A stretch of 64,000 bases of DNA, taken from assembly GCF_006345805.1 (NCBI RefSeq), contig NC_043024.1:9238001-9302000 (forward strand). Direction: 5' to 3'. The notes beneath the pieces were generated by a model. That model saw only the letters and a list, made by a program, of their open reading frames with translations. It was not told where the DNA came from and ran no database searches. Numbering within the stretch: the first letter of the stretch is position 1; the number at the start of each line of letters is the position of its first letter. Positions 2,543-64,000 of this stretch are shown here, one piece after another. Both the position numbers and the translations under genes were made by a program. The DNA is from Octopus sinensis. Lineage: Eukaryota.

Positions 2543-2560
2543 TATATTATATTATATTAT

Positions 2561-6020: not shown

Positions 6021-6355
6021 GTTGGTGCTAGTATTATTGTTGGAATCTATAATTCACAGGTTTCTCAACTTCTTCACTGGGGTTCTATATGGTTGCACCA
6101 TGTGCTAGAAATAACAGCCAAGTCTATCTCAGCTCATAATTTGCTGTATTAGAAATGGACAAGTTGCAGAATGCAATCTCCAGTTCCCTGTGTATAGAGA
6201 AAAGACAAGATGGTTGCAATTAAGATGCATTTTTCCATCATAAACCTGCTGAGCCAGAGTTGATCTAGGATTAAAGATTAACAGAAACTACAGAATTTGG
6301 GCTTCAAAGAATCTGGTTTGTCTTTGACAAAATTAACCCCTAACTTCTCACTACA

Positions 6356-6928
6356 CATACCTATTTCTTTACTACCCACAAGGGGCTAAACACAGAGAGG
6401 ACAAACGAGGACAGACAAATGGATTAAGTCGATTAAATCGACCCCAAAAGTATGGAGGGCAAAGTCAACCTCGGCGGAATTTGAACTCAGAATGTAGCGG
6501 CAGACAAAATACCTATTTCTTTACTACCCACAAGGGACTAAACACAGAGGGGACAAACAAGGACAGACAAACGGATTAAGTCGATTATATCGACCCCAGT
6601 GCATAACTGGTACTTATTTAATCGACCCCGAAAGGATGAAAGGCAAAGTCGACCTCAGTGGAATTTGAACTCAGAATGTAGCGGCAGACGAAATACCTAT
6701 TTCATTACTACCTACAAGGGGCTACACACAGAGGGGACAAACAAGGACAGACAAACGGATTAAGTCGATTATATCGACCCCAGTGCGTAACTGGTACTTA
6801 TTTAATCGACCCCGAAAGGATGAAAGGCAAAGTTGACCTTGGTGGAATTTGAACTCGGAACGTAACGGCAGATGAAATACCACTAAGCATTTCACCTGGT
6901 GTGCTAACGATTCTGCCAGCTAGCCGCC
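6356..6928 (-). mobile_element. Family B SINE with its 3' body in three tandem copies
   Basis: TATTTC(T/A)TTACTACC restarts at 6362, 6514, 6698; single tRNA head at 6900-6928. Confidence 0.85.
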
Positions 6929-24016: not shown

Positions 24017-24960
24017 GCCTTAGAGTTAATTTAGCAATGACCAAAGTATTAGTAAGCAAGAAAGCAGACAAATTACTAATCCCTTCTGAGAAATGGCCCT
24101 GCTCAATATGTAGAAAAGGTGTGGGTAAGAAATTCCATTCGTTGTACCAAGTGCAAGCTATGGATCTCTTATGTGTCCATAGCTTGCACTTCAATTCTAG
24201 TCCTTGCTTCCATACCTGAAGTTTCTTTCTTTCAATTCCAGTCCTTTCCATACCAGAAGTTTCTTTCTCTAACTCAAACAGACATTCAGATATATAAAAA
24301 CAAGGCCCTCAGTATAAAGAGCTTCCAAGGGCAACAAGTCTTACATTCCTCTGTTATGGCCTGGAGGACTACGATAAACAAAAGTGGGCCAAGAATCAAC
24401 CCATGGTGAACTCCTACCTGCATACTAAATTTGTTGGTATACTCATTGCCAATTTTTATCTTACTGACTGCATCCATCAATATGGTTTGGCTGGCGCTCA
24501 CCAACCACTCAGCTATCCTTAGCTTCTGCATCAATCTCCAGAAAAGCAAGTGAGGGACCCTGTCAAAGGCTTTCTCCATGTTGACAAATGCTAAGTACAG
24601 GATTTTTGTTTTCACTGAATACTTCTGCATTTACCTTACTAGGAAGATAGCATTCATTAGTAGTGCTTCTCCCTGGCACAAAACCACCTGCATCTCATCC
24701 AGGATAACAGGTTTTCTAATTAGTTGAGCTGTGACCCTTTCTGCAACTTTCATGAACTGGTCCAGTAATTTGATCCCTCTGTAGCAGTTGACTTAAATGC
24801 TGCTACACCAGTCATTGGGTACAACCCCTTCCTGGACAACCTGATTAACTATACAGGTGACTAGGCCATATCCCACTTTGCCAGACATTTTAAGCATCTT
24901 GATGGTAATTCCTGATGAACCGGGAACTTTCTCACTCTTAAGAAGTTTATTTAAACTGAA
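24017..24960 (-). mobile_element. Degenerate RTE-type LINE reverse transcriptase fragment with an internally inverted segment
   Basis: Minus ORF 24286-24630 LAFVNMEKAFDRVP...GVHHGLILGPLLF (RT motifs); the downstream LRVNLAMTKVLVS...WPCSICRKGV part lies on the plus strand at 24017-24164. Confidence 0.8.
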
Positions 24961-39656: not shown

Positions 39657-42600
39657 TCATGATGACCAAGCAGGGTTACTCACACCCACCTTTTTTATCA
39701 CATCCTTCCATCGATTCACATACTTTTTCTGTGTCAGGTTCCTCTTCTCTAAATCCATCTTGCTCTTTAGATGGTATCTGAAGTATTTTAACATACCATA
39801 TCCAGAGACAAAGGATCCTGACACCAAACCTTCCAATCTAGTTCTCCACACACACTCTTTCAGTACTGCCACCGTACAGTGAAAACAAGCCTCACCTTCC
39901 TTTGAGAGTCCAGCTGGCGGTATCATCTTTATTATAGAACCAGCCGATAGCTGTACTCGTCCCAGATGCGACAACACGTGTTCTACGTAACTTATTAAGC
40001 CTGACAGCTCCTGACAATGTACAAAAGCGTGCTGGACGGTTTCATCGTCCAACCCACATCTTGGACATGTCGGTGGCACTGACATTCCATGCCTATATAA
40101 CTTATCGCGAACAGGTAGAGCATTCCTATAGCACTGCCAAGTCAGGGATTTTTGGTAATTGTCCAAATACCCCGGCTTGAAAGTCTTCTTAAACAGGTCG
40201 GATAGTTGATCCTCATCGAACCCCAGAGACCCTCTTAGGACGTCGTCATTTTTTGCCTCTACCATCCTTCTATAAAATGTCGAGGTGGTATTCCCGCAGC
40301 CGGCTTTGCCTATCTTGTGGATCAGCCAGAGTGCCTGTCGGCACTCTTTCTGCCATAAAGTCAGTTCCGTCTTTTAATGAAACCGGGTTTAAATCTCTCC
40401 ATAGAGTCCGGTTGCGGGAAGAAATTATCTGCCAGCGGACTCCACACCTTATCACCTTCCAGGTGAAACCAGAGATGTCTCAGTCTCAGCGCATGCCTGC
40501 GCATCATTAACCAAGGCATCCCCAGCCCACCTTTAGTGGTTCCTGGCAACACACGGAGCGCCTTACAAGTGGCTTTCCTCCCTTCCACAAAAAGCGGAAA
40601 AGGAGTCGATCCAACTTGCTTAGCCACAAATCGGGGCAAGGCACGACAGTCAGGCGATAGGTGATTACAGATGCTATAAACACCTGTACCACCTCCGCCC
40701 TCCCTTTCAAGGAAAGATGCCTTCCGGACCACTCCCAAACTATGGCTTCTACCTTGGTCACTACCTCGCTCCAATTTTTCTCCGTCTGGGAGTCTGAACC
40801 AAACCAAACTCCAAGCAATTTAACAGGACCATCTGTCCAGTGTCCAACAACACTGGACGATATCGGCTTGTTCCTCCAGGTGCCGAGGCGCAAACCAGTG
40901 GACTTGTCCTTGTTAACTTTTGCCCCAGCCACCGCTTCGTATCTTCGGAGAGCACCTTCTACACGAGTTAGTTGTGCTTCGTTGGACACGATGAAGGTGA
41001 CGTCATCCGCATACGCAGAAACAGACTTACCGCATCCGATTTCATTAGGATTGCATCTCACCGTCTCCAACTTCCGCAGCAATGGCTCAAGAGCCAAAAC
41101 GTACAGGAGAGGGGACAAGGGACATCCTTGACGAACTGAACGCTTAATCGAAAACGGTTCCGTTAAGTAACCGTTTATCTGGACTGTGGACTTGATACCG
41201 CTGTACATAGCTGATATCCACCCGCGAAAGTCAGGACCTAGCCCAGCCGCTTCGAGAACCGTCGCCAGGTACTGATGATCTACCCTATCAAATGCTTTAC
41301 TTTGGTCTAAATGGACCAATGCCCCTCCTTTGCCGGCTAATTGCCCAACCCTGTCTATAGTGTAGCGTAGAAGGTGAAGATTATCTTCGATCGACCTGCC
41401 TGGGATTGCACATGTCTGTGCCTTTCCGACAAGTTTTTCCATGACGACCTTCAACCTTTCTGCTAACACCTTGGCCAAAATCTTTAACTCTACATTAAGT
41501 AGAGTTATGGGCCTATAATTACTAATATTATCCCCCTTGCTCGGGTCTTTCTGGATCAGCGTCACAACTCCCCGGCTCACAGAACTGGGAATCCTCCCAT
41601 TCTGTTGCCAGTTTGCGTAGACGCTTGCCAGTATGTCCCCGAACAAGTCCGGCATACAACAATAAAACTCATAGGGCAGACCATCCAGTCCCGGCGACTT
41701 TTCCCGGGCGCATTCAGCCAAAACCCCTCTTACCTCCGCGGGAGTAATCGGTCCTTCACAGCGTTCCGCTCTGCTTGGCGAGAGCCGAGGCCCACCAGCT
41801 AGGAAGTTCTGTAAGTCCTCCCCTCGCTCGAGTGGATCGCCCTCCCCAAACAACCGAGCGAAATGCTGTTGAAAGACCTTCTGTATCTCCTCCTGTCCAT
41901 AGATTTTGCGTCCCTGTTCGTCAGTTAAAGACTTAATAGAGGACTTTTTGCCCTTCTGACTCTCCACACGACGTGCCCATCCGGCAACATTAATACCTTC
42001 TCGTTTCACTGCACGTAGCTTAGCTCTGACTCTACATCCTTCATGCTTGGCATTGAGGTGACGGTACAAGATCGTTCTCTCTGCTAACACTCTAGATGCA
42101 CAGCCAGATCCCATTGCCTCGTCTAAGTTCTTAACTAAATCGCCCTCTATTCTAGTCCTATCTAAACTTAGCTGGTTGCTAAATCTAATGGACTCCAAAC
42201 GGATGGCTCTTTTGAGGGCGATCCACCATCTATTATTAATGATGGTTCCACATAATGCCCTCTGGACTAATTCCATAATCCGGTTACGGAAAGCTTCACA
42301 AGCCAAAATAGACTTGTTCATTTTCCAGTATCCGGGTCCCTGTCTATGGCATTTATCTACATGTACCTCACACGTCACTAATTTGTGATCCGTGTAAGGC
42401 ACAATACAAAATTGTGGACAGCTAATGCTATTCCTATCTCGTTCTTTAACAAATACCCTATCTATATACGATCTGCGTGAGCCGTCATTGTTACTCCACG
42501 TCCACTGTGGAATGCTCGGCTCATCCATTCGAAACCGATCTACTAGATTAAAGCTCGTCAGTAGACCCTTAAGGCAAGGATTCCCCCTTCTATCAGACGA

Positions 42601-43053
42601 GCCCACACTATCTATCCGCGCATCGATGATAGTGTTGAAATCCCCTACCAATACTACCGTTTTAGACGTCACTAGAAAGTGCTCCAAGTTCCGATAAAAA
42701 CCAGTCTGCCTACCCTCATTAGGAGCATAAACAGCTACCAACCTGAAGGACTGCTTACTTACGTGAGTTACATCGAGGACAACCAGCCTACCTTCTGAGT
42801 CCATAAAGACAGTACTTACCTGTAAGTCCAAGTTCTTCCTGATAAGGACTGCCACGCCTGCACTTCCTCCTCGGCTAGGAGAAATAAATTTCTCGTAACC
42901 ATTGAGAAGATGCGAGAACGCTTGGGTTCCTCTCATCTTGGACTCGGTGACAATGGCTACATCTATTCTGTGTGTCCTGAGGTCGTCCAGCAAGCAAGCC
43001 TGTTTCCATTTCGACCCCATTCCACGCACATTTATACAGCCCAACTTAATCAT
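39657..43053 (-). CDS. ORF2: APE endonuclease + reverse transcriptase + C-terminal zinc finger (~1132 aa after correcting two 1-bp deletions near 40530 and 40365)
   Basis: INVRG, VTE, VYAP, GDFN, YIDR, TDH (APE); GLDG, YRPITLLN, DQSKAFDRV, VRQGCPLSP, YADD (RT); CPRC...ETVQHAFVHC; pieces 43053-40507, 40807-40361, 40265-39657 join in register. Confidence 0.92.
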
Positions 43054-43077
43054 CGATGAATGAAGAAAGTTTGTTAC

Positions 43078-44555
43078 TTACGGTTGTGAGAGGGAGCATG
43101 GCAGCTTTTGTCTGCCTGCCTCCCCCACACTCTCCGTTGTTGCTGGGCATTTAACCGGCGTTGCCACCGGGCTCTGGGATGGAGTGGCTGCCGGGCTAAT
43201 ATTCAATTTTCCAGCTATCACCTCTTGTGTGACATCTTTAATCAGGTTGTCCCTCACGTGTAGTTGGAAGAGTCTCTCCTTCCATTCCTCCTCTCCGACC
43301 TTCGCATACCTCCAATCCGGGTTTTTTTCCGATGATCTGAAACATTTTATGTTTGGTTTCGCCTTTATGTACCAAACTACTCTCTCGTTTTTTGTGTTAT
43401 AAGCAATGCACCTATCGGTTTTTTTGAATCCTTTTAAAGTTGGGGGCTGGGGTTTAATGAAATGCTGGCCTACAAAAGTAGTGCCAGCGGGGTGGGATTG
43501 GATAATTTTTTTGTGTTGTTCTTCTGCGTTTGTTTTTCTTTTTGTTTGGGGTGGGGAGTCCGGGGTATTGGATTTCTTCCTTTTGTTGGTTACAGTCGTA
43601 TATTCCATTACTTCCAGTTTTCCATTTGATAAAATATTTTCCACCTCGTTTTCGTTTTCGCTTTGTTTTCCATTCATTTTCTTTTCCTCCTTTTGACTTT
43701 CATTTTGCTTTTTCCGGGTATTCTCTTTTGTTGTTGCTGTGATGTCTGCTTTGTTCTCCACAGCGGTTTGAATGGGGGCATTAACGGGTTTTTTTCTTTT
43801 TGCACTCTGAGCGGACGTGACCCTTCTGCCCACATTTGAAACATCTGGGCCTACGTCCCTCAACCGATACCCGCGCAGTGTGTCCATCCCCCACGAAGAC
43901 CCTGTCTGGCAAACTCTCCAGCGTTGCATTGTCAGCTTGAACGATCATTTCAAGCTGCTGACCTTTCCAAAATTTTGCCTCTTTCATCCTCATGTTTAAA
44001 ATGTTTAATTTCTCTTCTACGTCGAATACGACCGCTGTTGCTGCCCACATTACATCGTAACCTGTTGGTATATCCTCTATTGTTATCTTAGCTGTTCTGC
44101 GCCCTAAGTACGTGGGCAGCAACAGGATGTCTGCACTCTTCAACGTTTGAGTTGAAATTTCCTTCGCTATGCTAGCCGACTCGAAATGCGCTTCAATAGT
44201 AGCGCTTCTCACTCCTCGGCCAACATAGCGAACCTTGTTCCAAATTGGTGCCATGCACCGTTCTACCAATTCATTTCTTACATCTGCAATCTTTTTTCCT
44301 TAATATTATATACCTTATAAATTACCGTCTTCTCACGGATTGCTTGTAAGGTGTCAGGGGGCGGTATTATTCTCGTTTCTTCTCCATCCTTTGTATGAAC
44401 TTTCTGAACTTGAAGAGATCCTCCATTGTTACTTCCAGTTCTATAACATTGCCTCCAACGGCTTCCGAAAAACTTTGTTTCTCCTTTGTATCCTTTTGCT
44501 TTATAACTTCTCCCATCTCGGGAAAATCAGAATTTGACGTTAAGTCAAGATCCAT
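43078..44555 (-). CDS. ORF1: nucleic-acid-binding protein with CCHC zinc knuckle (~492 aa after correcting three 1-bp indels near 44377, 44295, 43790)
   Basis: ATG at 44555; CFKCGQKGHVRSEC; track ORFs 44367-44606, 43781-44269, 43078-43929 chain via A-run indels; stop is 24 nt before the ORF2 ATG. Confidence 0.75.
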
Positions 44556-47744: not shown

Positions 47745-49298
47745 CATATACTCTTTTACTCTTTTTTACTTGTTTCAAGTCATTTTGACTGCGGCCATGC
47801 TGGAGCACCGCCTTTTAGTCGAGCAAATCGACCCCGGAACTTATTCTTTTTGTAAGCCCAGCACTTATTCTATCGGTCTCTTTTGCCGAACCACTAGGTG
47901 ACGGGGGACGTAAACACACCAGCATCGGTTGTCAAGTGATGCTAGGGGGACAAACACAGACACACAAACACAGACACACACACATACACACGCACACACA
48001 CACACACACACACATACACGCATATATATACATATATACGACGTGCTTCTTTCAGTTTCCGTCTACCAAATCCACCCAGAAGGCTTTGGTCGGCTCGAGG
48101 CTATAGCAGAAGACACTTGCCCAAGGTGCCACGCAGTGGGACTGAACCCGGAACCATGTGGTTGGTAAACAAGCTACTTACCACACAGCCACTCCGACAT
48201 GTATATATATATATACATATATACGACAGGCTTCTTTTAGTTTCCGTCTACCAAATCCACCCAGAAGGCTTTGGTCGGCCCGAGGCTATAGAAGAAGACA
48301 CTTGCCCAAGGTGCCATGCAGTGGGACTGAACCCGGAACCATGTGGTTGGTAAACAAGCTACTTACCACACAGCCACTCCGACATGTATATATATATATA
48401 CATATATACGACAGGCTTCTTTTAGTTTCCGTCTACCAAATCCACCCAGAAGGCTTTGGTCGGCCCGAGGCTATAGAAGAAGACACTTGCCCAAGGTGCC
48501 ATGCAGTGGGACTGAACCCGGAACCATGTGGTTGGTAAACAAGCTACTTACCACACAGCCACTCCGACATGTATATATATATATACATATATACGACAGG
48601 CTTCTTTTAGTTTCCGTCTACAAATCCACCAGAAGGCTTTGGTCGGCCGAGGCTATAGCAGGAGACACTTGCCCAAGGTGCCACGCAGTGGGACTGAACC
48701 GGAACCATGTGGTTGGTAAACAAGCTACTTACCACACAGCCACTCCGACATGTATATATATATATACATATATACGACAGGCTTCTTTTGTTTCCGTCTA
48801 CCAAATCCACCCAGAAGGCTTTGGTCGGCCCGAGGCTATAGCAGGAGACACTTGCCCAAGGTGCCACGCAGTGGGACTGAACCCGGAACCATGTGGTTGG
48901 TAAACAAGCTACTTACCACACAGCCACTCCGACATTATATATATATACATATATACGACAGGCTTCTTTTAGTTTCCGTCTACCAAATCCACCCAGAAGG
49001 CTTTGGTCGGCCTGAGGCTATAGAAGAAGACACTTGCCCAAGGTGCCACGCAGTGGGACTGAACCGGAACCATGTGGTTGGTAAACAAGCTACTTACCAC
49101 ACAGCCACTCCGACATGTATATATATATATACATATATACGACAGGCTTCTTTTAGTTCCGTCTACCAAATCCACCCAGAAGGCTTTGGTCGGCCCGAGG
49201 CTATAGAAGAAGACACTTGCCCAAGGTGCCACGCAGTGGGACTGAACCCGGAACCATGCGGTTGGTAAGCAGGCTACTCACCACACAGCCACTCCTGT
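47745..49298 (-). mobile_element. Family C SINE whose ~185-bp 5' head is repeated seven times in tandem
   Basis: TATACGAC unit starts near 48035, 48220, 48405, 48590, 48771, 48953, 49137; each unit contains the A and B boxes on the minus strand. Confidence 0.9.
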
Positions 49299-49403
49299 GC
49301 ATGTGTATAAATATACATATTTATGCAAATTCACATAGATGTCACAAACAAATTCTGTGAAGTTTTGTAAATTCAGTTCTACACTATTTAACAGATGAAA
49401 CGC

Positions 49404-50653: not shown

Positions 50654-51036
50654 TGAATGTATTTATATGTGTGTGTATGTATGTAACCAACCTCAGATAG
50701 CATTTCCATCGCCTGTAGGAACATTAACACCACCACCACCACCACCACACCACCACCACCACCACACCACCACCACCACCACCACACCACCACCACCCAC
50801 CACCACACCACCAATACAACATCTGCTGTCTCTTCACTTAACATTCTCTTTCTCCTTAATTCCACTAATCTCTCCAGATATGACCCACTTCAAGGAACCA
50901 ATCCTAGCTAATACCCAGACATTGCAATTTTACCCTTCTCTATTCCAGCATTTTTGGAAAAATTCAAGTGATTTTCCTTCCGAATCTCCTCATTGACATT
51001 TTGGAAGAAAACTGAGCTAAATACTATAATTATTAA

Positions 51037-51107
<71 letters not shown>

Positions 51108-51185
51108 CTTCATCATCATCATCAATCATCATCATTATTATTATATTATTATTATTTTATTATTATTATTATTATTACTATTATT

Positions 51186-51217
<32 letters not shown>

Positions 51218-51239
51218 TATATTATTATTATTATTATTA

Positions 51240-51280
<41 letters not shown>

Positions 51281-51328
51281 GTTATTATTATTATCGTAGT
51301 CGTCGTCATCATCACCATCATCATCATC

Positions 51329-51402
<74 letters not shown>

Positions 51403-51451
51403 GTCGTCGTCAACATCATCATCATCATCATCATCATTATTATTATTATTA

Positions 51452-51527
<76 letters not shown>

Positions 51528-51555
51528 CGTTATTATTATAAATAATAATAATAAT

Positions 51556-51770
51556 AAACAAACATTCCGGCAAATATATAACCAAAATACCAGGACTTAC
51601 GAATGTATATAACATACAGAAAATAGCACTACTAGGCACTGCATACATCCTACGTAAGGCAATTTCAATGCAGTGACAATAAGGGCACTGCAACAAACCA
51701 CAGCACATACCCAAGGCACACAGAGCTGCGCTCGGTAGTACCGCGAAGGCACGTGATAAAAATAATACTG
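51556..51770 (+). mobile_element. R4/Dong-like (RLE) LINE extreme 3' end, subfamily 1
   Basis: Translates KYITKIPGLTNVYNIQKIALLGTAYILRKAISMQ*, homologous to the end of ORF 52045-52257; followed by (AAT)n. Confidence 0.7.
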
Positions 51771-51905
51771 AATAATAACAACAGCAAAAAATAACAACAA
51801 CAACAACAATAATAATAATAATAATAATAATGATAATAATAATAATAATAATAATAATAATAGTAGTAGTAATAATAATAATAATAACAATAATAAAAAT
51901 AATAA

Positions 51906-51936
<31 letters not shown>

Positions 51937-51937
51937 A

Positions 51938-52034
<97 letters not shown>

Positions 52035-52035
<1 letters not shown>

Positions 52036-52461
52036 GAAATCAGCATGAGCAAATATAAAGATCTTGAAATAGAAATCAGCAAAATGTGGAAGCTGAAGAC
52101 TAAAACAATACCTGTTGTCATAGGTGCCCTGGGAATGATAGCAAAAGGGGCTGATAGCTACCTAACTCAGATACCAGGAAACCCAAAAATGGCAGAAGTT
52201 CAAAAGATAGTGTTCATGGGAACTGCTCATATCCTACGCAAAATACTCTCTATGTAATCTCAAGGTTTAAAACAAACATAATTTTCGGTTTAAAAAAAAA
52301 AAAAACCTTTTTTTAGACATTCATTAGTACAACATCCCCACCCCCCAAATATATGGCACACTAGGCATAACAACATGAACTTCCAACCCTGTTGTCTCTT
52401 GAGGTCTCTGGGTGAGACTTGGAGCCAACTTGTACAAATATAAAGCAAAAGTCAAACATAG
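52035..52461 (+). mobile_element. R4/Dong-like (RLE) LINE 3' end, subfamily 2
   Basis: SKYKDLEIEISKMWKLKTKTIPVVIGALG...QKIVFMGTAHILRKIL, the end of a restriction-like endonuclease domain; (AAT)n on both sides. Confidence 0.8.
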
Positions 52462-52470
52462 AATAATAAA

Positions 52471-52506
<36 letters not shown>

Positions 52507-52526
52507 TAATAATATAATAATAATAA

Positions 52527-52575
<49 letters not shown>

Positions 52576-52632
52576 TAATAATATAATATAATAATAATAA
52601 TGAGAATAATAATTATAATAATAATAATAATG

Positions 52633-52690
<58 letters not shown>

Positions 52691-52794
52691 TAATAATAAT
52701 AAAAATAATAATAATAATAAAAATAATAATAATAAAAATAATAATAATGATAATAATGATAATAATGATAATAATAATAATAATGATGATGGTG

Positions 52795-52849
<55 letters not shown>

Positions 52850-52886
52850 TAATAATAATAATAATAAAAATAATAATAATAATAAT

Positions 52887-53364
52887 ATTGTCTTGGTATA
52901 AAAGATGGGCTACAGCAAATATTCTGCTCAATACAACAGATTTGCTTGTCAGTTGTTTGACCTTAACCAGTTGAGCATGTCCCTTAGTGGCTGACAATAC
53001 GTGCATCTCTGATCACGAGCAGAAGTAGTGGGGGAGCATCATAGCCATGTGTTGAGAGGGATTCTTGGAGGTTTGAATAATTCACCTCTGGAAACATGGG
53101 TGGTTCTTTCAACATCCTTAAACAACCCTTATTCAGGGACCTTTTGAGCGGGATGGGCTACTCAACCTGAAGAAAATTATAACTGGGCCCCACCTGCAAG
53201 GTCATGTGCTGTTTATCTTGATATGAGATCACCATGTCGCGCACATATGGTTGTGATGCATGTGCCTGGTGTACCCTTATCAGACGGGTAGTCATGATGG
53301 GTATATTGGGCTTCGTATATTTTACCCCAGTGTCACTTTGATGGCATGAACTGCTCTCTCACTC
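52887..53364 (+). mobile_element. Second, 5'-shorter copy of the 555-bp (AAT)n-embedded element
   Basis: Near-identical to about 28206-28683. Confidence 0.75.
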
Positions 53365-53404
<40 letters not shown>

Positions 53405-53519
53405 TAATAATATAATAATAATAATAATAATAATAATAACGACAACAGAGAATTCAGAGAGCACAAACCTCCGCCAAGGCAACACCAACGTCCTCTCAAG
53501 GATTAGCCAGGATGGGGGT

Positions 53520-53700
53520 TTTTTCCCCTTTCTGTGGGTCATTCAAGTGTTTTCTCTGGTCCTGTTAGAATCTCATTGAACTTCTCTGCCAGTGCCTTAT
53601 GTATCCCTGTTAAATATTTTAACCATAAATTGGGAACTCTTGTCGTGCCCTGGCACCTTCCATTTGCTTAGTTTTTGCAGCCCCTGGGTTATCTCTTTTA
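53520..53700 (-). pseudogene. R4/Dong-like RT N-terminal fragment
   Basis: Minus strand translates, across a frameshift, KWKVPGHD..VPNLWLKYLTGIHKALAEKFNEIL, resembling the WKAPGxDxIxNFWLK motif. Confidence 0.55.
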
Positions 53701-53724
53701 TTGTGATAGGCATCAATAAGTGTT

Positions 53725-54298
53725 CAGCTGGGATCTTTTCGGTTTGACCGGCAGTTTTTAAAAATAATTTCCACGTAACTAAACACTTTTAAACTTCGTA
53801 TACTGGTAGAATGTGTTTATAAAACATCTTTTTCTCTTGGCTTTATTGAGAAAATTCTATAGTTGGTAAGGTATTTGTTGTTTTTTCTTCAATTTCTGCA
53901 ATTTCAACCAATCAATGACGTCCATTGAGGTAAAAAAAAAAACATTCTGTGCCGTATGAATATGTCCCTCGTTTAAGAAACAGATTAGGTTTATTTACAT
54001 TTGTGAAGAAAAAAGATTATGGTAAATTTTCTTTTGAGAGTTAAAAAGGTCGAGTTGCGTCCCCTAGACAGTCTGTGGTTTGTGTTTCTGTTTCTCGACC
54101 CCATGTCGAATTTATCGATTTTTTTCAGAACTGGGGGAACTTTTCAAAATTTTCACTGCGTTAGTTTTGAATTATGACATTGGGCTATGTGTTTGTCAAG
54201 TTTCATCAGAATCGGTTGAAAGCTGTGGTCAGGGTGAGGGTACAACCTAACAGACACACAGACACGCACACAGACAAACTGCCGTTTATATATAGAGA
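53725..54298. mobile_element. Helentron/DINE-1-like non-autonomous element
   Basis: Subterminal inverted repeat CGGCAGTTT (53749-53757) / AAACTGCCG (54276-54284), (ACAG/AC)n near one end, TATATATAGAG terminus. Confidence 0.5.
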
Positions 54299-54347
54299 GA
54301 TACTATGTCTGTTTTGGCGTTTTACAATCCCAGTACTTATGTTATTA

Positions 54348-55050
54348 CGAGCAAAACGCCCCCCATCCAATAGACGGTGTTGAGTTGTCAAACATTTAAA
54401 CCAAATTTTCTCAAAACAACTTGTCCGACCGTCCCATAGGCCTCCCCTTTCAGAAACACTGATTTAACCTAAATTTGAGACACCAGCAAAAGAAGAAATA
54501 AAGATAGACTTTTTTTCTATTCCAAAGGAAAACGATTTTATTCACACAAATATGCAACCGAAGAGTTTAAAGTACCAGTAATGATAAGGCTGTTGACTGG
54601 GAGAACACAAACATGGTTTAAACAGTAAGCTTGGCAGGAAAGAAACGTGCCTTTAAGCAGTACAAAAACAAAAAAAAATGGAAGGTGCAGTTATGTACAG
54701 GCTGACGGAAGAAAAGCAGGACAAAAACGATACATACAAATGGGTTAGCTGGAGGTAAATCTAGATGGAAAAGTATGATGATTTTTTTATGCAAACTGCC
54801 CGTGTATTCTTCTCGCGTACGCGTAGTATCGATCGCAACAGCTGGTGTACTTGCGCGTACAAATGCACGTTCCCACGGCTTTATCGATCGCATTCTCACC
54901 TGGAATCGATTTTTGTAATTTTTTCAAGATTTATATACGCCCTGATACCGTCGGTATCAACATATCAAATTTGAGCGCAATCGGATGGAGGATGCCCGAG
55001 ATCCTGGAAGACACACACACAGACAGACAGAACGGATTTTATATAATAGA
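54348..55050 (-). mobile_element. Non-autonomous Helitron-like element, copy 2
   Basis: Minus strand starts TCTATTATATAAAATCCG, ends hairpin + CTCG|T; ends homologous to 2561-3185, central part differs. Confidence 0.65.
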
Positions 55051-55051
55051 C

Positions 55052-55600
55052 TAGGTGTTGTTCTATGGGCACCATTTGTGTCTTTCATGAGGTATTTTTC
55101 CTTTTAAATGCTCTTTTTCAATTCCTGAAACCTTTATTTTTTGGAGGAGGGAGTAGTGCAATCGATTTGGTTAATTTCCGCCCTGTGTCCATTTCAGAAT
55201 CGGTGCCCTCTAGCGGACTACAGCCACAGCCCAAATCATAATGGCAGTCACACGGTTCCTTGCATTGAGCTTTGACTTCAGGAGAAGTTTAAGGCGCTTC
55301 AAATATGCAGCGGTGACCCTGTCCTTCATTTCTCCGTGCAAGCTCCAAGATCCCAAGGTATTTGTACCCATCATCATCATCATCCGGGTCTCCCATTAGC
55401 TCTCCGTTTCCCAGTCCTATGCCCCTACAATCTGCTCTTTTTCCCTCTTCAAAATAAACAACACTGCACACTGCGAGATACCGAATTCCCTCCCTATATC
55501 CCTGCTGCAAATCTGTACAGATCAATCTGCATCTCCATATCAGGCCATATCAGGCTCTGTTTTTGTGAACAGTTTTAAAATCATCCATGAAGAGTAGGTG
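55052..55600 (-). pseudogene. R4/Dong-like reverse transcriptase fragment continuing out of the satellite
   Basis: Across frameshifts: HLLFMDD.KLFTKTEPDM..VQICSRDIGREFGISQCAV...GYKYLGILEL...AYLKRLKLLLKSKLNARN. Confidence 0.8.
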
Positions 55601-58600
55601 GTTGTGACGTGGTCCATGCACAAGTGTTTTGGTACCGTTTGCACTTCTTCATTACGACCTTATCTATCACAGGGTAGTCCTTGGTGTCCTTGGATCGTTT
55701 TGGGCATCTCTTTTGTTCTACTAGTTGATTGTTTTCTGCAAAAAAACGTATATATTTTTCCTACAGTCTCAACCTGCCTCTCCATATCAGGCCATATCAG
55801 ACTCTGTTTTTGAGAACATTTTAAAATCATCCATGAAGAGTAGGTGGTTGTGACGTGGTCCATGCACAAGTGTTTTGGTACCGTTTGCACTTCTTCATTA
55901 CGACCTTATCTATCACAGGGTAGTCCTTGGTGTCCTCGGATCGTTTTGGGCATCTCTTTTGTTCTACTAGTTGATTGTTTTCTGCAAAAAAACGTATATA
56001 TTTTTCCTACAGTCTCAATCTGCCTCTCCATATCAGGCCATATCAGGCTCTGTTTTTGAGAACATTTTTAAATCATCCATGAAGAGTAGGTGGTTGTGAC
56101 GTGGTCCATGCACAAGTGTTTTGGTACCGTTTGCACTTCTTCATTACGACTTTATCTATCACAGGGTAGTCCTTGGTGTCCTCGGATCGTTTTGGGCATC
56201 GCTTTTGTTCTACTAGAAGTAGATTGTTTTCTGCAAAAAAACGTATATATTTTTCCTACAGTCTCAATCTATCTCTCCATATCAGGCCATATCAGGCTCT
56301 GTTTTTGTGAACATTTTAAAATCATCCATGAAAAGAAGGTGGTTGTGACGTGGTCCATGCACAAGTGTTTTGGTACCGTTTGCATTTCTTCATTACGACC
56401 TTATCTATCACAGGGTAGTCCTTGGTGTCCTCGGATCGTTTTGGGCATCTCTTTTGTTCTACTAGTTGATTGTTTTCTGCAAAAAAACGTATATATTTTT
56501 CCTACAGTCTCAATCTGCCTCTCCATATCAGGCCATATCAGGCTCTGTTTTTGTGAACAGTTTTAAATCATCCATGAAAAGAAGGTGGTTGTGACGTGGT
56601 CCATGCACAAGTATTTTGGTACCGTTTGCACTTCTTCATTACGACCTTATCTATCACAGGGTAGACCTTGGTGTCCTCGGATCGTTTTAGGCATCTCTTT
56701 TGTTCTATTTGTTGATTGTTTTCTGCAAAAAAACGTATATATTTTCCTACAGTCTCAATCTGCCTCTCCATATCAGGCCATATCAGGCTCTGTTTTTGTG
56801 AACATTTTTAAAATCATCCATGAAAAGAAGGTGGTTGTGACGTGGTCCATGCACAAGTGTTTTGGTACCGTTTGCATATCTTCATTACGACCTTAGCTAT
56901 CACATGGTAGTCCTTGGTGCCCTTAGATCGTTTTGGGCATCTCTTTTGTTCTACTAGTTGATTGTTTTCTGCAAAAAAAACGTATATATTTTTCCTACAG
57001 TCTCAATCTGCCTCTCCATATCAGGCCATATCAGGCTCTGTTTTTGTGAACAGTTTTAAATCATCCATGAAAAGAAGGTGGTTGTGACGTGGTCCATGCA
57101 CAAGTGTTTTGGTACCGTTTGCATTTCTTCATTACGACCTTATCTATCACAGGGTAGTCCTTGGTGCCCTTGGATCGTTTTGGGCATCTCTTTTGTTCTA
57201 CTAGTTGATTGTTTTCTGCAAAAAAACGTATATATTTTTCCTACAGTCTCAATCTGCCTCTCCATATCAGGCCATATCAGGCTCTGTTTTTGTGAACATT
57301 TTTAAATCATCCATGAAAAGAAGGTGGTTGTGACGTGGTCCATGCACAAGTGTTTTGGTACCGTTTGCATTTCTTCATTACGACCTTATCTATCACAGGG
57401 TAGTCCTTGGTGCCCTTGGATCGTTTTGGGCATCTCTTTTGTTCTACTAGTTGATTGTTTTCTGCAAAAAAACGTATATATTTTTCCTAGTCTCAATCTG
57501 CCTCTCCATATCAGGCCATATCAGGCTCTGTTTTTGTGAACATTTTTAAATCATCCATGAAAAGAAGGTGGTTGTGACGTGGTCAATGCACAAGTGTTTT
57601 GGTACCGTTTGCATTTCTTCATTACGACCTTATCTATCACAGGGTAGTCCTTGGTGCCCTTGGATCGTTTTGGGCATCACTTTTGTTCTACTAGTTGATT
57701 GTTTTCTGCAAAAAAACGTATATATTTTTCCTACAGTCTCAATCTGCCTCTCCATATCAGGCCATATCAGGCTCTGTTTTTGTGAACATTTTTAAATCAT
57801 CCATGAAAAGAAGGTGGTTGTGACGTGGTCCATGCACAGTATTTTGGTACCGTTTGCATTTCTTCATTACGACCTTATCTATCACATGGTAGCCCTTGGT
57901 ATCCTCGGATCGTTTTTGGCATATCTTTTGTTCTACTAGTTGATTGTTTTCTGCAAAAAAACGTATATATTTTTCCTACAGTCTCAACATGCCTCTCCAT
58001 ATCAGGCCATATCAGGCTCTGTTTTTGTGAACATTTTTAAATCATCCATGAAAAGAAGGTGGTTGTGACGTGGTCCATGAACAAGTGTTTTGGTACCGTT
58101 TGCATTTCTTCATTACGACCTTATCTATTACAGGATAGTCCTTGGTGTCCTCGGATCGTTTTGGGCATCTCTTTTGTGCTACTAGTTGATTGTTTTCTGC
58201 AAAAAAACGTATATATTTTTCCTACAGTCTCAATCTGCCTCTCCATATCAGGCCATATCAGGCTCTGTTTTTGTGAACAGTTTTAAATCATCCATGAAAA
58301 GAAGGTGGTTGTGACGTGGTCCATGCACAAGTGTTTTGGTACCGTTTGCATTTCTTCATTACGACCTTATCTATCACAGGGTATTCCTTGGTGTCCTCGG
58401 ATCGTTTTGGGCATCTCTTTTGTTCTACTAGTTGATTGTTTTCTGCAAAAAACGTATATATTTTCCCTACAGTCTCAACCTGCCTCTCCATATCAGGCCA
58501 CATCAGACTCTGCTTTTGTGAACATTTTTAAATCATCCATGAAAAGAAGGTGGTTGTGACGTGGTCCATGCACAAGTATTTTGGTACCGTTTGCACTTTT

Positions 58601-61600
58601 TCATTACGACCTTATCTATCACAGGGTAGTCCTTGGTGCCCTTGGATCGTTTTGGGCATCTCTTTTGTTCTACTAGTTGATTGTTTTCTGCAAAAAAACG
58701 TATATATTTTTCCTACAGTCTCAATCTGCCTCTCCATATCAGGCCATATCAGGCCCTGTTTTTGTGAACATTTTTAAATCATCCATGAAAAGAAGGTGGT
58801 TGTGACGTGGTCCATGCACAAGTATATTGGTACCGTTTGCACTTCTTCTTTACGACTTTAACTATCACAGGGTAGTCCTTGGTGTCCTCGGATCGTTTTG
58901 GGCATCTCTTTTGTTCTACTAGTTGATTGTTTTCTGCAAAAAAACGTATATATTTTTCCTACAGTCCCAATCTGCCTCTCCATATCAGGCCATATCAGAC
59001 TCTGTTTTTGAGAACAGTTTTAAATCATCCATGAAAAGAAGGTGGTTGTGACGTAGTCCATGCACAAGTATTTTGGTACCGTTTGCACTTCTTCATTACG
59101 ACTTTATCTATCACAGGGTAGTCCTTGGTGTCCTCGGATCGTTTTGGGCATCTCTTTTGTTCTACTAGTTGATTGTTTTCTGCAAAAAAACGTATATATT
59201 TTTCCTACAGTCTCAATCTGCCTCTCCATATCAGGCCGTATCAGGCTCTGTTTTTGAGAACATTTTTAAATCATCCATGAAAAGAAGGTGGTTGTGACGT
59301 GGTCCATGCACAAGTATTTTGGTACCGTTTGCATTTCTTCATTACGACTTTATCTATCACAGGGTAGTCCTTGGTGTCCTCGGATCGTTTTGGGCATCTC
59401 TTTTGTTCTACTAGTTGATTGTTTTCTGCAAAAAAACGTATATATTTTTCCTACAGTCTCAATCTGCCTCTCCATATCAGGCCGTATCAGACTCTGTTTT
59501 TGAGAACATTTTTAAATCATCCATGAAAAGAAGGTGGTTGTGACGTGGTCCATGCACAAGTATTTTGGTACCGTTTGCACTTCTTCATTACGACTTTATC
59601 TATCACAGGGTAGTCCTTGGTGTCCTCGGATCGTTTTGGGCATCTCTTTTGTTCTACTAGTTGATTGTTTTCTGCAAAAAAACGCATATATTTTTCCTAC
59701 AGTCTCAATCTGCCTCTCCATATCAGGCCGTATCAGGCTCTGTTTTTGAGAACATTTTTAAATCATCCATGAAAAGAAGGTGGTTGTGACGTGGTCCATG
59801 CACAAGTGTTTTGGTACCGTTTGCATTTCTTCATTACGACCTTATCTATCACAGGGTAGCCCTTGGTGTCCTCGGATCGTTTTGGGCATATCTTTTGATC
59901 TACTAGTTGATTGTTTTCTGCAAAAAAACGTATATATTTTTCCTACAGTCTCAATCTGCCTCTCCATATCAGGCCATATCAGGCTCTGTTTTTGTGAACA
60001 TTTTTAAATCATCCATGAAAAGAAGGTGGTTGTGACGTGGTCCATGCACAAGTGTTTTGGTACCGTTTGCATTTCTTCATTACGACCTTATCTATCACAG
60101 GGTAGCCCTAGGTGTCCTCGGATCGTTTTGGGCATATCTTTTGTTCTACTAGTTGATTGTTTTCTGCAAAAAAACGTATATATTTTTCCTACAGTCTCAA
60201 TCTGTCTCTCCATATCAGGCCATATCAGGCTCTGTTTTTGTGAACATTTTTAAATCATCCATGAAAAGAAGGTGGTTGTGACGTGGTCCATGCACAAGTG
60301 TTTTGGTACCGTTTGCACTTCTTCATTACGACCTTATCTATCACAGGGTAGCCCTTGGTGCCCTTCGATCGTTTTGGGCATCTCTTTTGTTCTACTAGTT
60401 GATTGTTTTCTGCAAAAAAACGTATATATTTTTCCTACAGTCTCAATCTGCCTCTCCATATCAGGCCATATCAGGCTCTGTTTTTGTGAACATTTTTAAA
60501 TCATCCATGAAAAGAAGGTGGTTGTGACGTGGTCCATGCACAAGTGTTTTGGTACCGCTTGCATTTCTTCATTACGACCTTATCTATCACAGGGTAGCCC
60601 TTGGTGTCCTCGGATCGTTTTGGGCATATCTTTTGTTCTACTAGTTGATTGTTTTCTGCAAAAAAACGTATATATTTTTCCTACAGTCTCAACATGCCTC
60701 TCCATATCAGGCCATATCAGGCTCTGTTTTTGTGAACATTTTTAAATCATCCATGAAAAGAAGGTGGTTGTGACGTGGTCCATGAACAAGTGTTTTGGTA
60801 CCGTTTTCATTTCTTCATTACGACCTTATCTATTACAGGATAGTCCTTGGTGTCCTCGGATCGTTTTGGGCATCTCTTTTGTGCTACTAGTTGATTGTTT
60901 TCTGCAAAAAAACGTATATTTTTCCTACAGTCTCAATCTGCCTCTCCATATCAGGCCATATCAGGCTCTGTTTTTGTGAACAGTTTTAAATCATCCATGA
61001 AAAGAAGGTGGTTGTGACGTGGTCCATGCACAAGTGTTTTGGTACCGTTTGCACTTCTTCATTACGACCTTATCTATCACAGGGTAGTCCTTGGTGTCCT
61101 CGGATCGTTTTGGGCATCTCTTTTGTTCTACTAGTTGATTGTTTTCTGCAAAAAAACGTATATATTTTCCCTATAGTCTCAAACTGCCTCTCCATATCAG
61201 GCCATATCAGACTCTGTTTTTGTGAACATTTTTAAATCATCCATGAAAAGAAGGTGGTTGTGACGTGGTCCATGCACAAGTATTTTGGTACCGTTTGCAC
61301 TTCTTCATTACGACCTTATCTATCACAGGGTAGTCCTTGGTGCCCTTGGATCGTTTTGGGCATCTCTTTTGTTCTACTAGTTGATTGTTTTCTGCAAAAA
61401 AACGTATATGTTTTTCCTACAGTCTCAATCTGCCTCTCCATATCAGGCCATATCAGGCTCTGTTTTTGTGAACATTTTTAAATCATCCATGAAAAGAAGG
61501 TGGTTGTGACGTGGTCCATGCACAAGTATATTGGTACCGTTTGCACTTCTTCTTTACGACTTTAACTATCACAGGGTAGTCCTTGGTGTCCTCGGATCGT

Positions 61601-64000
61601 TTTGGGCATCTCTTTTGTTCTACTAGTTGATTGTTTTCTGCAAAAAAACGTATATATTTTTCCTACAGTCCCAATCTGCCTCTCCATATCAGGCCATATC
61701 AGACTCTGTTTTTGAGAACAGTTTTAAATCATCCATGAAAAGAAGGTGGTTGTGACGTAGTCCATGCACAAGTATTTTGGTACCGTTTGCACTTCTTCAT
61801 TACGACTTTATCTATCACAGGGTAGTCCTTGGTGTCCTCGGATCGTTTTGGGCATCTCTTTTGTTCTACTAGTTGATTGTTTTCTCTGCAAAAAAACGTA
61901 TATATTTTTCCTACAGTCTCAATCTGCCTCTCCATATCAGGCCGTATCAGGCTCTGTTTTTGAGAACATTTTTAAAATCATCCATGAAAAGAAGGTGGTT
62001 GTGACGTGGTCCATGCACAAGTTTTTGGTACCGTTTGCACTTCTTCATTACGACCTTATCTATCACAGGGTAGTCCTTGGTGTCCTCGGATCGTTTTGGG
62101 CATCTCTTTTGTTCTACTAGTTGATTGTTTTCTGCAAAAAAACGTATATATTTTTCCTACAGTCTCAATCTGCCTCTCCATATCAGGCCATATCAGGCTC
62201 TGTTTTTGAGAACATTTTAAAATCATCCATGAAGAGTAGGTGGTTGTGACGTGGTCCATGCACAAGTGTTTTGGTACCGTTTGCACTTCTTCATTACGAC
62301 TTTATCTATCACAGGGTAGTCCTTGGTGTCCTCGGATCGTTTTGGGCATCGCTTTTGTTCTACTAGAAGTAGATTGTTTTCTGCAAAAAACGTATATATT
62401 TTTCCTACAGTCTCAATCTATCTCTCCATATCAGGCCATATCAGGCTCTGTTTTTGTGAACATTTTAAAATCATCCATGAAAAGAAGGTGGTTGTGACGT
62501 GGTCCATGCACAAGTGTTTTGGTACCGTTTGCATTTCTTCATTACGACCTTATCTATCACAGGGTAGTCCTTGGTGTCCTCGGATCGTTTTGGGCATCTC
62601 TTTTGTTCTACTAGTTGATTGTTTTCTGCAAAAAAACGTATATATTTTTCCTACAGTCTCAATCTGCCTCTCCATATCAGGCCATATCAGGCTCTGTTTT
62701 TGTGAACAGTTTTAAATCATCCATGAAAAGAAGGTGGTTGTGACGTGGTCCATGCACAAGTATTTTGGTACCGTTTGCACTTCTTCATTACGACCTTATC
62801 TATCACAGGGTAGACCTTGGTGTCCTCGGATCGTTTTAGGCATCTCTTTTGTTCTATTTGTTGATTGTTTTCTGCAAAAAAACGTATATATTTTTCCTAC
62901 AGTCCCAATCTGCCTCTCCATATCAGGCCATATCAGGCTCTGTTTTTGAGAACATTTTAAAATCATCCATGAAAAGAAGGTGGTTGTGACGTGGTCCATG
63001 CACAAGTGTTTTGGTACCGTTTGCACTTCTTCATTACGACCTTATCTATCACAGGGTAGTCCTTGGTGTCCTCGGATCGTTTTGGGCATCTCTTTTGTTC
63101 TACTAGTTGATTGTTTTCTGCAAAAAAACGTATATATTTTCCCTACAGTCTCAATCTGCCTCTCCATATCAGGCCGTATCAGGCTCTGTTTTTGAGAACA
63201 GTTTTAAATCATCCATGAAAAGAAGGTGTTTGTGACGTGGTCCATGCACAAGTATTTTGGTACCGTTTGCATTTCTTCATTACGACCTTATCTATCACAG
63301 GGTAGTCCTTGGTGCCCTTGGATCGTTTTGGGCATCTCTTTTGTTCTACTAGTTGATTGTTTTCTGCAAAAAAAACGTATATATTTTTCCTACAGTCTCA
63401 ATCTGCCTCTCCATATCAGGCCATATCAGACTCTGTTTTTGTGAACAGTTTTAAATCATCCATGAAAAGAAGGTGGTTGTGACGTGGTCCATGCACAAGT
63501 GTTTTGGTACCGTTTGCATTTCTTCATTACGACCTTATCTATCACAGGGTAGTCCTTGGTGCCCTGGATCGTTTTGGGCATCTCTTTTGTTCTACTAGTT
63601 GATTGTTTTCTGCAAAAAAACGTATATATTTTTCCTACAGTCTCAATCTGCCTCTCCATATCAGGCCATATCAGGCTCTGTTTTTGTGAACATTTTTAAA
63701 TCATCCATGAAAAGAAGGTGGTTGTGACGTGGTCCATGCACAAGTGTTTTGGTACCGTTTGCATTCTTCATTACGACCTTATCTATCACAGGGTAGTCCT
63801 TGGTGCCCTTGGATCGTTTTGGGCATCTCTTTTGTTCTACTAGTTGATTGTTTTCTCTGCAAAAAAACGTATATATTTTTCCTACAGTCTCATCTGCCTC
63901 TCCATATCAGGCCATATCAGGCTCTGTTTTTGTGAACAGTTTTAAATCATCCATGAAAAGAAGGTGGTTGTGACGTGGTCCATGCACAAGTGTTTTGGTA
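55516..64000. repeat. ~246-bp satellite, about 35 copies, running off the window end, derived from a LINE RT segment
   Basis: Unit starts at 55598, 55844, 56090...63963; minus strand of each unit encodes GPRHNHLLFMDD...KTEPDM-ERQIETV; 10-bp duplication CCATATCAGG in every unit. Confidence 0.95.

What the first reader, a model, noticed from the sequence alone, without database searches (positions are those of the whole stretch)
55052..64000. An 8.5-kb-plus satellite born from the catalytic core of a LINE reverse transcriptase
Seen: each 246-bp unit carries, on the minus strand, GPRHNHLLFMDD...KTEPDMERQIETV (RT motif C). At the array edge the sequence runs on seamlessly into the next part of the RT (VQICSRDIG...YKYLGILE), so the parental LINE fragment is still attached. 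A frameshifting 10-bp duplication (CCATATCAGG x2) is in every unit, so the donor was already dead when amplification began. Established: TE-derived satellites are known, but usually from termini or UTRs; capture of the amplification with its parental flank intact is uncommon. The large homogeneous array could be heterochromatic or centromere-associated and a source of antisense RT small RNAs (inference).
Basis: partly seen in the sequence, partly recalled or inferred. Interest (0 to 1): 0.7.

Follow-up and report, generated by a model that had tools for sequence, protein, structure and literature searches.

The report
Tandem array from dead LINE fragment
A 246-bp piece of a broken jumping gene (a LINE retrotransposon of the R2/R4/Dong type) has been copied head to tail at least 34 times while still joined to the rest of its parent copy. 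It is a clean but ordinary example of how repetitive "satellite" DNA starts from a transposable element.

Summary
A 246-bp tandem array (34.5 copies, about 96% alike) runs from 55516 to the end of the window. Every unit carries the RT motif-C peptide NHLLFMDDLKMF on the minus strand, and all 35 units have the doubled 10-mer. The last unit runs in register into 0.45 kb of unique, decayed RT sequence (55515 to about 55060).

- The unit is not a contiguous "catalytic core". It joins RT motifs 1-2 (profile positions 507-550) to motif C (from 656). About 105 residues holding motifs A and B are deleted in every unit.
- Satellites derived from LINE ORF2 are already on record (PROsat, Pvc20, chicken HinfI).
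- "Satellite", heterochromatin, centromere and small-RNA roles are untested. Only one locus is visible.

The parent belongs to LINEs with a restriction-like endonuclease. Full-length relatives lack an APE domain, match solved R2 proteins best, and one abuts an (AAT)n tract. This fits R4/Dong, but no phylogeny was done.

Most likely mechanism: tandem duplication in place of an already dead copy, then growth by unequal exchange. Multi-unit blocks at 98.5-99.5% identity support this. No function is indicated. It is a new member of a known kind, of modest interest.

The parts
55516..64000 (-). Tandem array of 246-bp units, 34.5 copies, cut off by the window end. The LINE sense strand is the minus strand.
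   Evidence: TRF, edge alignment, 35 anchors at spacings of 244-249 bp, 27-mer found 35 times against 0 expected.
55860..55991 (-). Segment A in one representative unit: RT fingers, motifs 1-2, reading FFAENNQLVEQKRCPKRSEDTKDYPVIDKVVMKKCKRYQNTCAW. It ends where motif A should begin. The same segment recurs in every unit.
   Evidence: tblastn: P0055 506-542, L001 N-part 465-501 and P0034 483-516 all map here. Profile HMM positions 507-550, i-E 2.7e-6 per unit.
55859..55862 (-). Internal deletion junction in the representative unit (about +/-3 bp). The reading changes frame from ..CAW to GPRHNH.., and about 105 profile positions (motifs A and B) are missing. The same junction is in all units.
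   Evidence: The gap between HMM 550 and 656. The same gap appears against six full-length relatives and L001. Uniform unit length.
55793..55861 (-). Segment B in the representative unit: RT motif C, reading GPRHNHLLFMDDFKMFSKTESDM.
   Evidence: tblastn to P0001, P0008, P0044 and P0055. HMM 656-677, i-E 4.4e-6.
55782..55801 (.). Doubled 10-mer CCATATCAGG/CCATATCAGA in the representative unit. It shifts the frame between ..TEPDM and ERQIETV. Present in 35 of 35 units.
   Evidence: Removing one copy gives an alignment to P0001 with no gap at this site.
55761..55762 (.). Unit-to-unit (duplication) junction in the representative unit. On the minus strand ..ETV (CTGTA) is followed by GKIY.. (GGAAAAATA), that is, the end of segment B is joined to the start of segment A.
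   Evidence: Comparison of the unit with the array/flank boundary, where the same CTGTA is followed by the parental CAGATT (VQICS..).
55060..55515 (-). Unique parental LINE flank: RT from just after motif C through the thumb (VQICSRDIG .. GYKYLGILE .. LKSKLNARN .. WAVAVVR .. about KYLMKDTNGAHRT). It has several frameshifts and stops, and it is cut short about 300 residues before the expected C-terminus.
   Evidence: tblastn to more than 30 relatives down to 55183. HMM 666-796, i-E 1.6e-19. The last ~120 bp were read by eye against L001 and are inference.
54333..55048 (.). Unrelated interspersed repeat that abuts and truncates the LINE flank. A second copy lies inverted at 2560-3200. It is context, not part of the array.
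   Evidence: blastn of the flank against the window: 54333-54594 matches 3200-2940 (91%) and 54783-55048 matches 2825-2560 (90%).

Best explanation
This is a locus-level tandem array that grew in place from an already defective copy of a LINE carrying a restriction-like endonuclease (R2/R4/Dong type).

Before amplification, the progenitor copy had already lost about 315 bp of the RT (motifs A and B) and had gained a 10-bp tandem duplication just after motif C. A first tandem duplication then joined the sequence just after motif C (..ETV) back to the RT motif 1-2 region (GKIY..). This created a 246-bp unit.

Unequal exchange or replication slippage between units then expanded the array to at least 34.5 copies. 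Whole blocks of several units were duplicated along the way. The downstream end of the array still reads straight into the parental RT.

The array encodes nothing. All frames are broken and no dyad or stable fold is present. It is most likely a neutral by-product.

Shown: the anatomy, the RT origin, the shared lesions, the in-register flank and the block duplications. Inferred: the order of events, the exchange mechanism and the lack of function.
For: - Array and periodicity.
- RT origin of two separate unit segments and of the flank, in collinear order.
- Motifs A and B missing from every unit (HMM 551-655 absent; uniform unit length).
- 10-bp duplication in 35 of 35 units, including the edge unit. 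Its removal restores alignment with no gap at the duplication site.
- Exact boundary at 55516, sharing CTGTA with the unit junction.
- Multi-unit blocks are far more alike than average: 98.55% over 1.7 kb at an offset of 11 units and 99.46% over 741 bp at an offset of 25, against a mean of 95.85%.
- Differences between units are mostly substitutions with a transition excess (112 transitions, 68 transversions, 27 indel cells). That pattern fits real mutation rather than long-read assembly noise.
- No structure or inverted repeats: z = +0.7; 0 inverted repeats.
- Relatives lack APE, carry CCHC plus a restriction-like endonuclease, and are closest to solved R2 proteins.
- Published models for the TE-to-satellite transition by unequal crossing-over: PMC6947457.
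Against: - The far end of the array lies outside the window, so the upstream parental flank and any short direct repeat that seeded the first duplication are unseen.
- No intact copy of the same family from the same genome was available. The best relative is only 52-55% identical in protein. The deletion and the duplication are therefore inferred against distant relatives, not against the true parent.
- Read depth could not be checked. The near-identical multi-unit blocks could be assembly duplications.
- Lack of function is an argument from absence.
Confidence: 0.78

Rival explanations
1. The array is one locus of a genome-wide, abundant satellite family, heterochromatic or centromere-associated. 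It may yield small RNAs antisense to Dong-like LINEs. The attached RT flank marks either the birthplace or a recombination product.
For: The array is at least 8.5 kb long and runs off the window. It is homogenised to about 96% with block duplications typical of satellite dynamics. The neighbourhood is dense in TEs and microsatellites. ORF2-derived satellites with pericentromeric locations are known in other taxa (PMC9659126).
Against: There is no second locus in the other 55 kb of the window. No related ORF was found among 5.8 billion proteins and there was no 27-mer hit in the metagenome contigs, although the source genome is probably not in those collections. No CENP-B-like dyad or notable structure was seen. 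Abundance, chromosomal position and small RNAs were not testable.
Confidence: 0.15
2. The array length, or part of it, is an assembly artefact: a short tandem duplication over-expanded by the assembler.
For: Blocks of 3 and 7 units recur at 99.46% and 98.55% identity. One unit pair is identical. The array runs to the end of the window, so its far boundary is unseen.
Against: The 34 full units differ by about 10 positions on average, with shared, structured variants. Differences are mainly substitutions with a transition excess rather than homopolymer indels. An over-expanded collapse would give near-identical units.
Confidence: 0.05
3. The satellite came first and a LINE inserted next to it, or the RT-like peptides in the unit are chance similarity.
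For: Dong-like LINEs have inserted repeatedly in this neighbourhood.
Against: Two independent unit segments match RT profile positions 507-550 and 656-677, in the right order and on the right strand, in every unit. The last unit continues into the flank at exactly the next RT residue, with no gap at the junction. LINE insertions are truncated at the 5' end and end with their 3' end, which is not the case here.
Confidence: 0.02

Closest known systems
LINE ORF2-derived satellites: PROsat (Phodopus roborovskii, L1 ORF2), Pvc20 (harbour seal, L1 ORF2), chicken HinfI/SCR1 (CR1 3'UTR plus part of ORF2)
   Same: Tandem repeat monomers derived from the coding region of a LINE second or only ORF (PMC9659126 Table 1; PMC6947457 Table 1).
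   Different: Those derive from APE-type LINEs (L1, CR1) in vertebrates and are established genome-wide satellites. Here the source is an invertebrate-type LINE with a restriction-like endonuclease, only one locus is seen, and the parental flank is still attached.
R4/Dong clade non-LTR retrotransposons (Dong of Bombyx mori, R4 of Ascaris, Rex6 of fish)
   Same: Relatives of the parent have a single ORF with a central RT and a C-terminal CCHC plus restriction-like endonuclease, with no APE. One relative abuts an (AAT)28 tract. Truncated C-terminal pieces in the window sit between (TAA)-type microsatellites. This matches the published description of the clade (PMC7998251).
   Different: The copy here is a dead fragment, not a working element. 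No phylogeny against Dong or R4 was done. No HDV-like ribozyme or N-terminal Myb-like domain was detected in relatives.
TE-to-satellite 'first steps' model (unequal crossing-over between or within TE copies; short-direct-repeat-mediated first duplication)
   Same: A partial TE segment is duplicated in tandem and then expanded and homogenised. Block duplications are visible (model described in PMC6947457).
   Different: The seeding short repeat cannot be seen, because the upstream parental sequence lies outside the window.
R2 retrotransposon proteins with solved structures (for example 9nl2, 8gh6)
   Same: These are the best solved-structure matches of the full-length relatives. The matches cover the RT, the thumb and the CCHC/endonuclease region (E = 4e-28).
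   Different: R2 elements are specific to 28S rDNA and carry N-terminal zinc-finger and Myb domains. Nothing here suggests rDNA targeting.

Membership tests
TE-derived tandem repeat / satellite DNA | Head-to-tail repeats of one monomer in a long array | tested here: met
   246 bp x 34.5 copies, 96% matches; 35 anchors at 244-249 bp spacing.
TE-derived tandem repeat / satellite DNA | Monomer homologous to part of a transposable element | tested here: met
   Unit segments match an RT profile at positions 507-550 and 656-677. tblastn to more than 30 RT proteins.
Satellite DNA in the strict sense | High genomic abundance, multiple or very long arrays, typically heterochromatic | not testable with these tools
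   Only one window was available and the array is cut by its end. No hits elsewhere, but the source genome is apparently absent from the collections.
Non-LTR retrotransposon (LINE) reverse transcriptase | RT motifs in canonical order (1, 2, A, B, C, D/E, thumb) | tested here: met
   For the parent as reconstructed from unit plus flank, motifs 1-2, C and downstream are present and collinear. A and B are deleted in the unit. Pfam RVT_1 is only marginal on the decayed fragment (E = 0.096) but clear in relatives.
LINEs with a restriction-like endonuclease (R2/R4/Dong/NeSL/CRE/HERO group) | No N-terminal APE endonuclease; C-terminal CCHC zinc finger plus a PD-(D/E)xK-type endonuclease | tested here: met
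   This was tested on relatives, not on the window copy, which lacks that region. Seven full-length relatives have RVT_1 with or without zf-RVT and no Exo_endo_phos. L001 and P0034-P0055 carry C..C..H..C and RRPD..IDIAVP..K motifs. A second HMMER stretch aligns to the R2 CCHC/endonuclease region. R2 is a far better match than L1 in the PDB.
R4/Dong clade | Insertion into (TAA)n microsatellites or rDNA | tested here: inconclusive
   The relative L001 starts directly after (AAT)28.7. The window has Dong-like C-terminal pieces between (TAA)-type tracts and an RT N-terminal piece abutting (AAT)n. The target site of the array's own parent is not visible, because it is truncated at about 55060.
R4/Dong clade | Phylogenetic placement of the RT with Dong/R4/Rex6 rather than R2, NeSL, CRE or HERO | not tested
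   No reference Dong or R4 sequences were available in the tools.
R4/Dong clade | 5' HDV-like ribozyme and divergent N-terminal Myb/SANT-like domain (PMC3774820, PMC7998251) | tested here: inconclusive
   An Rfam scan of the L001 5' end found only a spurious low-complexity hit. A Pfam scan of N-terminal regions of five relatives found no Myb or SANT domain even at E <= 10. The original report needed HHpred to see this domain.

The most novel reading that the evidence does not exclude
This locus is the preserved birthplace of a lineage-specific, genome-wide satellite founded by an RT-coding fragment of an R4/Dong-type LINE in an invertebrate, possibly a cephalopod. The progenitor's lesions and its parental flank are still readable. 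If so, the full path from a single dead TE copy to satellite DNA could be reconstructed, and perhaps its use as heterochromatin or as a source of piRNA-type small RNAs.
Probability: 0.12. Interest if true: 0.5.

Novelty: new member of a known kind. Interest (0 to 1): 0.3.

Why it matters
Tandem repeats that start from transposable elements are well documented. Most described cases are old arrays whose origin is inferred from residual similarity. Here the steps can be read directly: an internally deleted, frameshifted RT fragment, one duplication junction, block-wise expansion, and the parental sequence still attached in register. That makes it a neat teaching example, and possibly the first noted case from a Dong-like LINE with a restriction-like endonuclease. 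It does not reveal a new mechanism or open a new question, and no function is indicated.

Tried and rejected
- My first reading placed the upstream half of the unit at RT motif B (RGHQG.. taken as RGIFQGD). tblastn and the profile HMM rejected this and placed that half at motifs 1-2, upstream of motif A.
- Pfam on the raw unit translations gave nothing useful: RVT_1 at E = 0.096 on unit plus flank, and a spurious Cys_knot hit.
- Exact look-ups of ten array or flank ORFs, and of the 848-aa LINE ORF, found nothing in the protein and contig collections. The source assembly is apparently not indexed.
- A homology search with a 158-aa plus-strand ORF of the array gave no hits.
- An exact 27-mer scan of the metagenome contigs gave no hits.
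- Rfam and tRNA scans of the whole window found nothing.
- A search for an HDV-like ribozyme at the 5' end of relative L001 and for a Myb/SANT domain in the N-termini of relatives was negative or inconclusive.
- A search for a continuation of the parental LINE beyond the 54333-55048 repeat found none on the minus strand in collinear order.
- A literature string search for the SINE-like sequence, meant to identify the organism, gave no hits.
- Unit fold and dyad symmetry were unremarkable.
- No simple higher-order repeat period was found. There is only a weak rise in identity at a lag of 11 units, explained by one block duplication.
Full report
**What is there**

Tandem Repeats Finder reports one array from 55522 to 64000, with period 246, 34.5 copies, 96% matches and 0% indels. 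Aligning the edge to the unit consensus moves the first unit-homologous base to 55516. Anchoring on a conserved word gives 35 unit starts spaced 244-249 bp apart. A conserved 27-mer occurs 35 times, all inside the array, against 0 in shuffles. Mean pairwise identity of the 34 complete units is 95.9%. The array runs off the end of the window, so 8.5 kb is a minimum length.

- The quoted minus-strand peptides are present.
- The doubled 10-mer is in 35 of 35 units. 29 are exact and 6 carry one substitution in the second copy. The unit next to the flank has it too.
- RT relatives align by tblastn from the edge unit straight into the flank. For example, P0001 residues 9-94 cover 55615-55340 and residues 37-150 cover 55521-55183.
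- With one 10-mer removed, motif C, the duplication site and the array/flank junction align to P0001 with no gap at either site, at 55% identity over 56 residues.

**Origin in a reverse transcriptase**

A conceptual translation of unit plus flank finds 33 proteins. The best is 52% identical, and many carry Pfam RVT_1. I built a profile from 53 full-length relatives (1155 positions) and searched six-frame translations:

| Piece | Profile positions | i-E |
|---|---|---|
| Unit, one frame | 507-550 | 2.7e-6 per unit |
| Unit, another frame | 656-677 | 4.4e-6 |
| Flank | 666-796 | 1.6e-19 |

Six individual full-length proteins and locus L001 give the same map.

The first unit segment reads FFAENNQLVEQKRCPKRSEDTKDYPVIDKVVMKKCKRYQNTCAW. 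It corresponds to RT motifs 1-2 (EQKGCR..GTKDQL..DK..L..C) and stops where motif A (..LAMAWIDYKKAYD) begins. The second segment is motif C (NHLLFMDDLK).

Profile positions 551-655 are absent from every unit. These are about 105 residues, or about 315 bp, and include the motif A aspartate and motif B (RGIFQGDSLSP). So the unit is not a contiguous catalytic core.

**Lesions shared by all units**

1. The motif A-B deletion, which also shifts the frame.
2. The 10-bp duplication after motif C.
3. Apparently a 1-bp shift in a T7 run near the start of segment A. This one was read by eye.

Because these are in every unit, including the edge unit, the simplest reading is that the progenitor carried them before amplification. 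Early homogenisation cannot be excluded.

**Junctions**

Two kinds of junction recur.

- The deletion junction (..CAW|GPRHN..) joins RT parts in their normal order.
- The unit-to-unit junction joins the end of segment B to the start of segment A. On the minus strand CTGTA (..ETV) is followed by GGAAAAATA (GKIY..).

At the array edge the same CTGTA is followed by CAGATT.. (VQICS..), which is the next RT residues. That is exactly what a tandem duplication in place predicts.

**The flank**

From 55515 down to about 55060 the minus strand encodes the RT from just after motif C through the thumb, with several frameshifts and stops. It ends about 300 residues short of the expected C-terminus. There it meets an unrelated interspersed repeat (54333-55048) that has a second, inverted copy at 2560-3200. 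No collinear continuation of the LINE was found further on.

**Kind of LINE**

- Locus L001, fetched for the closest relative, holds a nearly full element. It has a single ORF of about 1070 residues with two frameshifts and a central RT. Its C-terminus carries C..C..H..C and RRPD..IDIAVP..K motifs, and there is no APE domain.
- Seven full-length relatives show only RVT_1, with or without zf-RVT, in Pfam. None has Exo_endo_phos.
- In the PDB the relatives match R2 proteins far better than L1 ORF2p: 4e-28 against 1e-7. A second aligned stretch covers the R2 CCHC/endonuclease region.
- L001 starts directly after an (AAT)28.7 tract.
- In the window, two truncated C-terminal pieces of the same LINE type lie on the plus strand, at 51593-51673 and 52045-52266, between (TAA)-type microsatellite blocks.
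- The literature describes R4/Dong as RT plus a REL-endonuclease inserting into rDNA or into (TAA)n in insects, molluscs and cnidarians (PMC7998251).

The R4/Dong guess is therefore consistent with all of this, but I made no phylogeny. The ribozyme and Myb-like features were not detected in relatives.

**How the array grew**

Unit variants are structured.

- Units 9-15 (57750-59469) match units 20-26 (60454-62175) at 98.55% over 1.7 kb.
- Units 2-4 match units 27-29 at 99.46% over 741 bp.
- The mean for blocks of the same size is 95.85%.

This is the signature of multi-unit unequal exchange. In principle it could also be an assembly duplication. Differences between units are mainly substitutions with a transition excess (112 transitions, 68 transversions, 27 indel cells). 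That argues against simple assembly noise. The unit has no significant fold (z = +0.7) and no inverted repeats.

**Function**

Nothing indicates one. All six frames are interrupted. No Rfam family matches. The unit is absent from the rest of the window, and no related ORF or exact 27-mer was found in the protein collection or the metagenome contigs. The source genome does not seem to be indexed there, so these negatives say little about abundance in the genome. Heterochromatic or centromeric location and small-RNA production remain untested.

**Comparison with what is known**

Reviews already list satellites derived from LINE ORF2: PROsat of Phodopus, Pvc20 of harbour seal and chicken HinfI from CR1 (PMC9659126; PMC6947457). 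They also describe the unequal crossing-over "first steps" model. This case adds a source of a different LINE type, with a restriction-like endonuclease and Dong-like features, and an unusually legible founder locus. I rate it a new member of a known kind, with interest about 0.3.

**Organism**

Not determined. The best named hit for a neighbouring APE-type LINE is Argonauta hians at 48% identity. From memory, the SINE-like repeats resemble octopus SINEs. A cephalopod is a weak guess only.

Noticed in passing
window 39657-44269 (minus strand): An apparently near-intact APE-type LINE. It has an 848-aa ORF (40507-43053) covering the endonuclease and RT, a 202-aa zf-RVT-like tail ORF (39657-40265), and upstream ORF1-like ORFs (43078-44269, with a CCHC knuckle). 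Best hits are 62% (unnamed, GCA_024449705.1) and 44-48%, including Argonauta hians.
   Followed up: partly
window 51593-51673 (+) and 52045-52266 (+), within microsatellite blocks 51025-53439: Two short, 5'-truncated C-terminal fragments of Dong-like LINEs (..IPVVIGALG..LGTAHILRKIL*). Each lies between (TAT)n, (ATA)n or (AAT)n tracts, as expected for repeated insertion into a (TAA)n target.
   Followed up: partly
window 53440-53800 (minus strand): A fragment of the N-terminal part of a Dong-like RT (..WKVPGHD.., about residues 350-450 of full-length relatives) that ends directly at the (AAT)n tract at 53365-53439. It is not collinear with the array's parental copy, and its relation to that copy is unexplained.
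   Followed up: partly
window 54333-55048 and 2560-3200: An interspersed repeat of about 0.7 kb present twice in inverted orientation, about 90% identical in two segments. One copy truncates the LINE flank. Its ends resemble ..CAGACACACAGAC..TTTATATA.
   Followed up: partly
window 48022-49320; also 6432-6881: Other TE-like tandem arrays: a 185-bp unit x 7.1 (96% matches) and a 184-bp unit x 2.4. The units look like tRNA-related SINE sequence (..GGTGCCACGCAGTGGGA..). This genome seems prone to tandem amplification of TE pieces.
   Followed up: no
window 3482-4355 and 4592-6027: A 291-bp x 3 tandem repeat (96% matches), followed by a 1.4-kb array of a GT/GGT-rich 71-bp unit with extreme GC skew (0.69).
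   Followed up: no
window 24319-24948 (minus strand): A weak RT-like fragment (22-28% identity to the RT relatives) from another, unidentified LINE family.
   Followed up: no
L001 7696-11051 (minus strand): In the relative's contig, a second LINE of a different type (Exo_endo_phos_2 plus RVT_1) lies immediately downstream of the Dong-like element.
   Followed up: no
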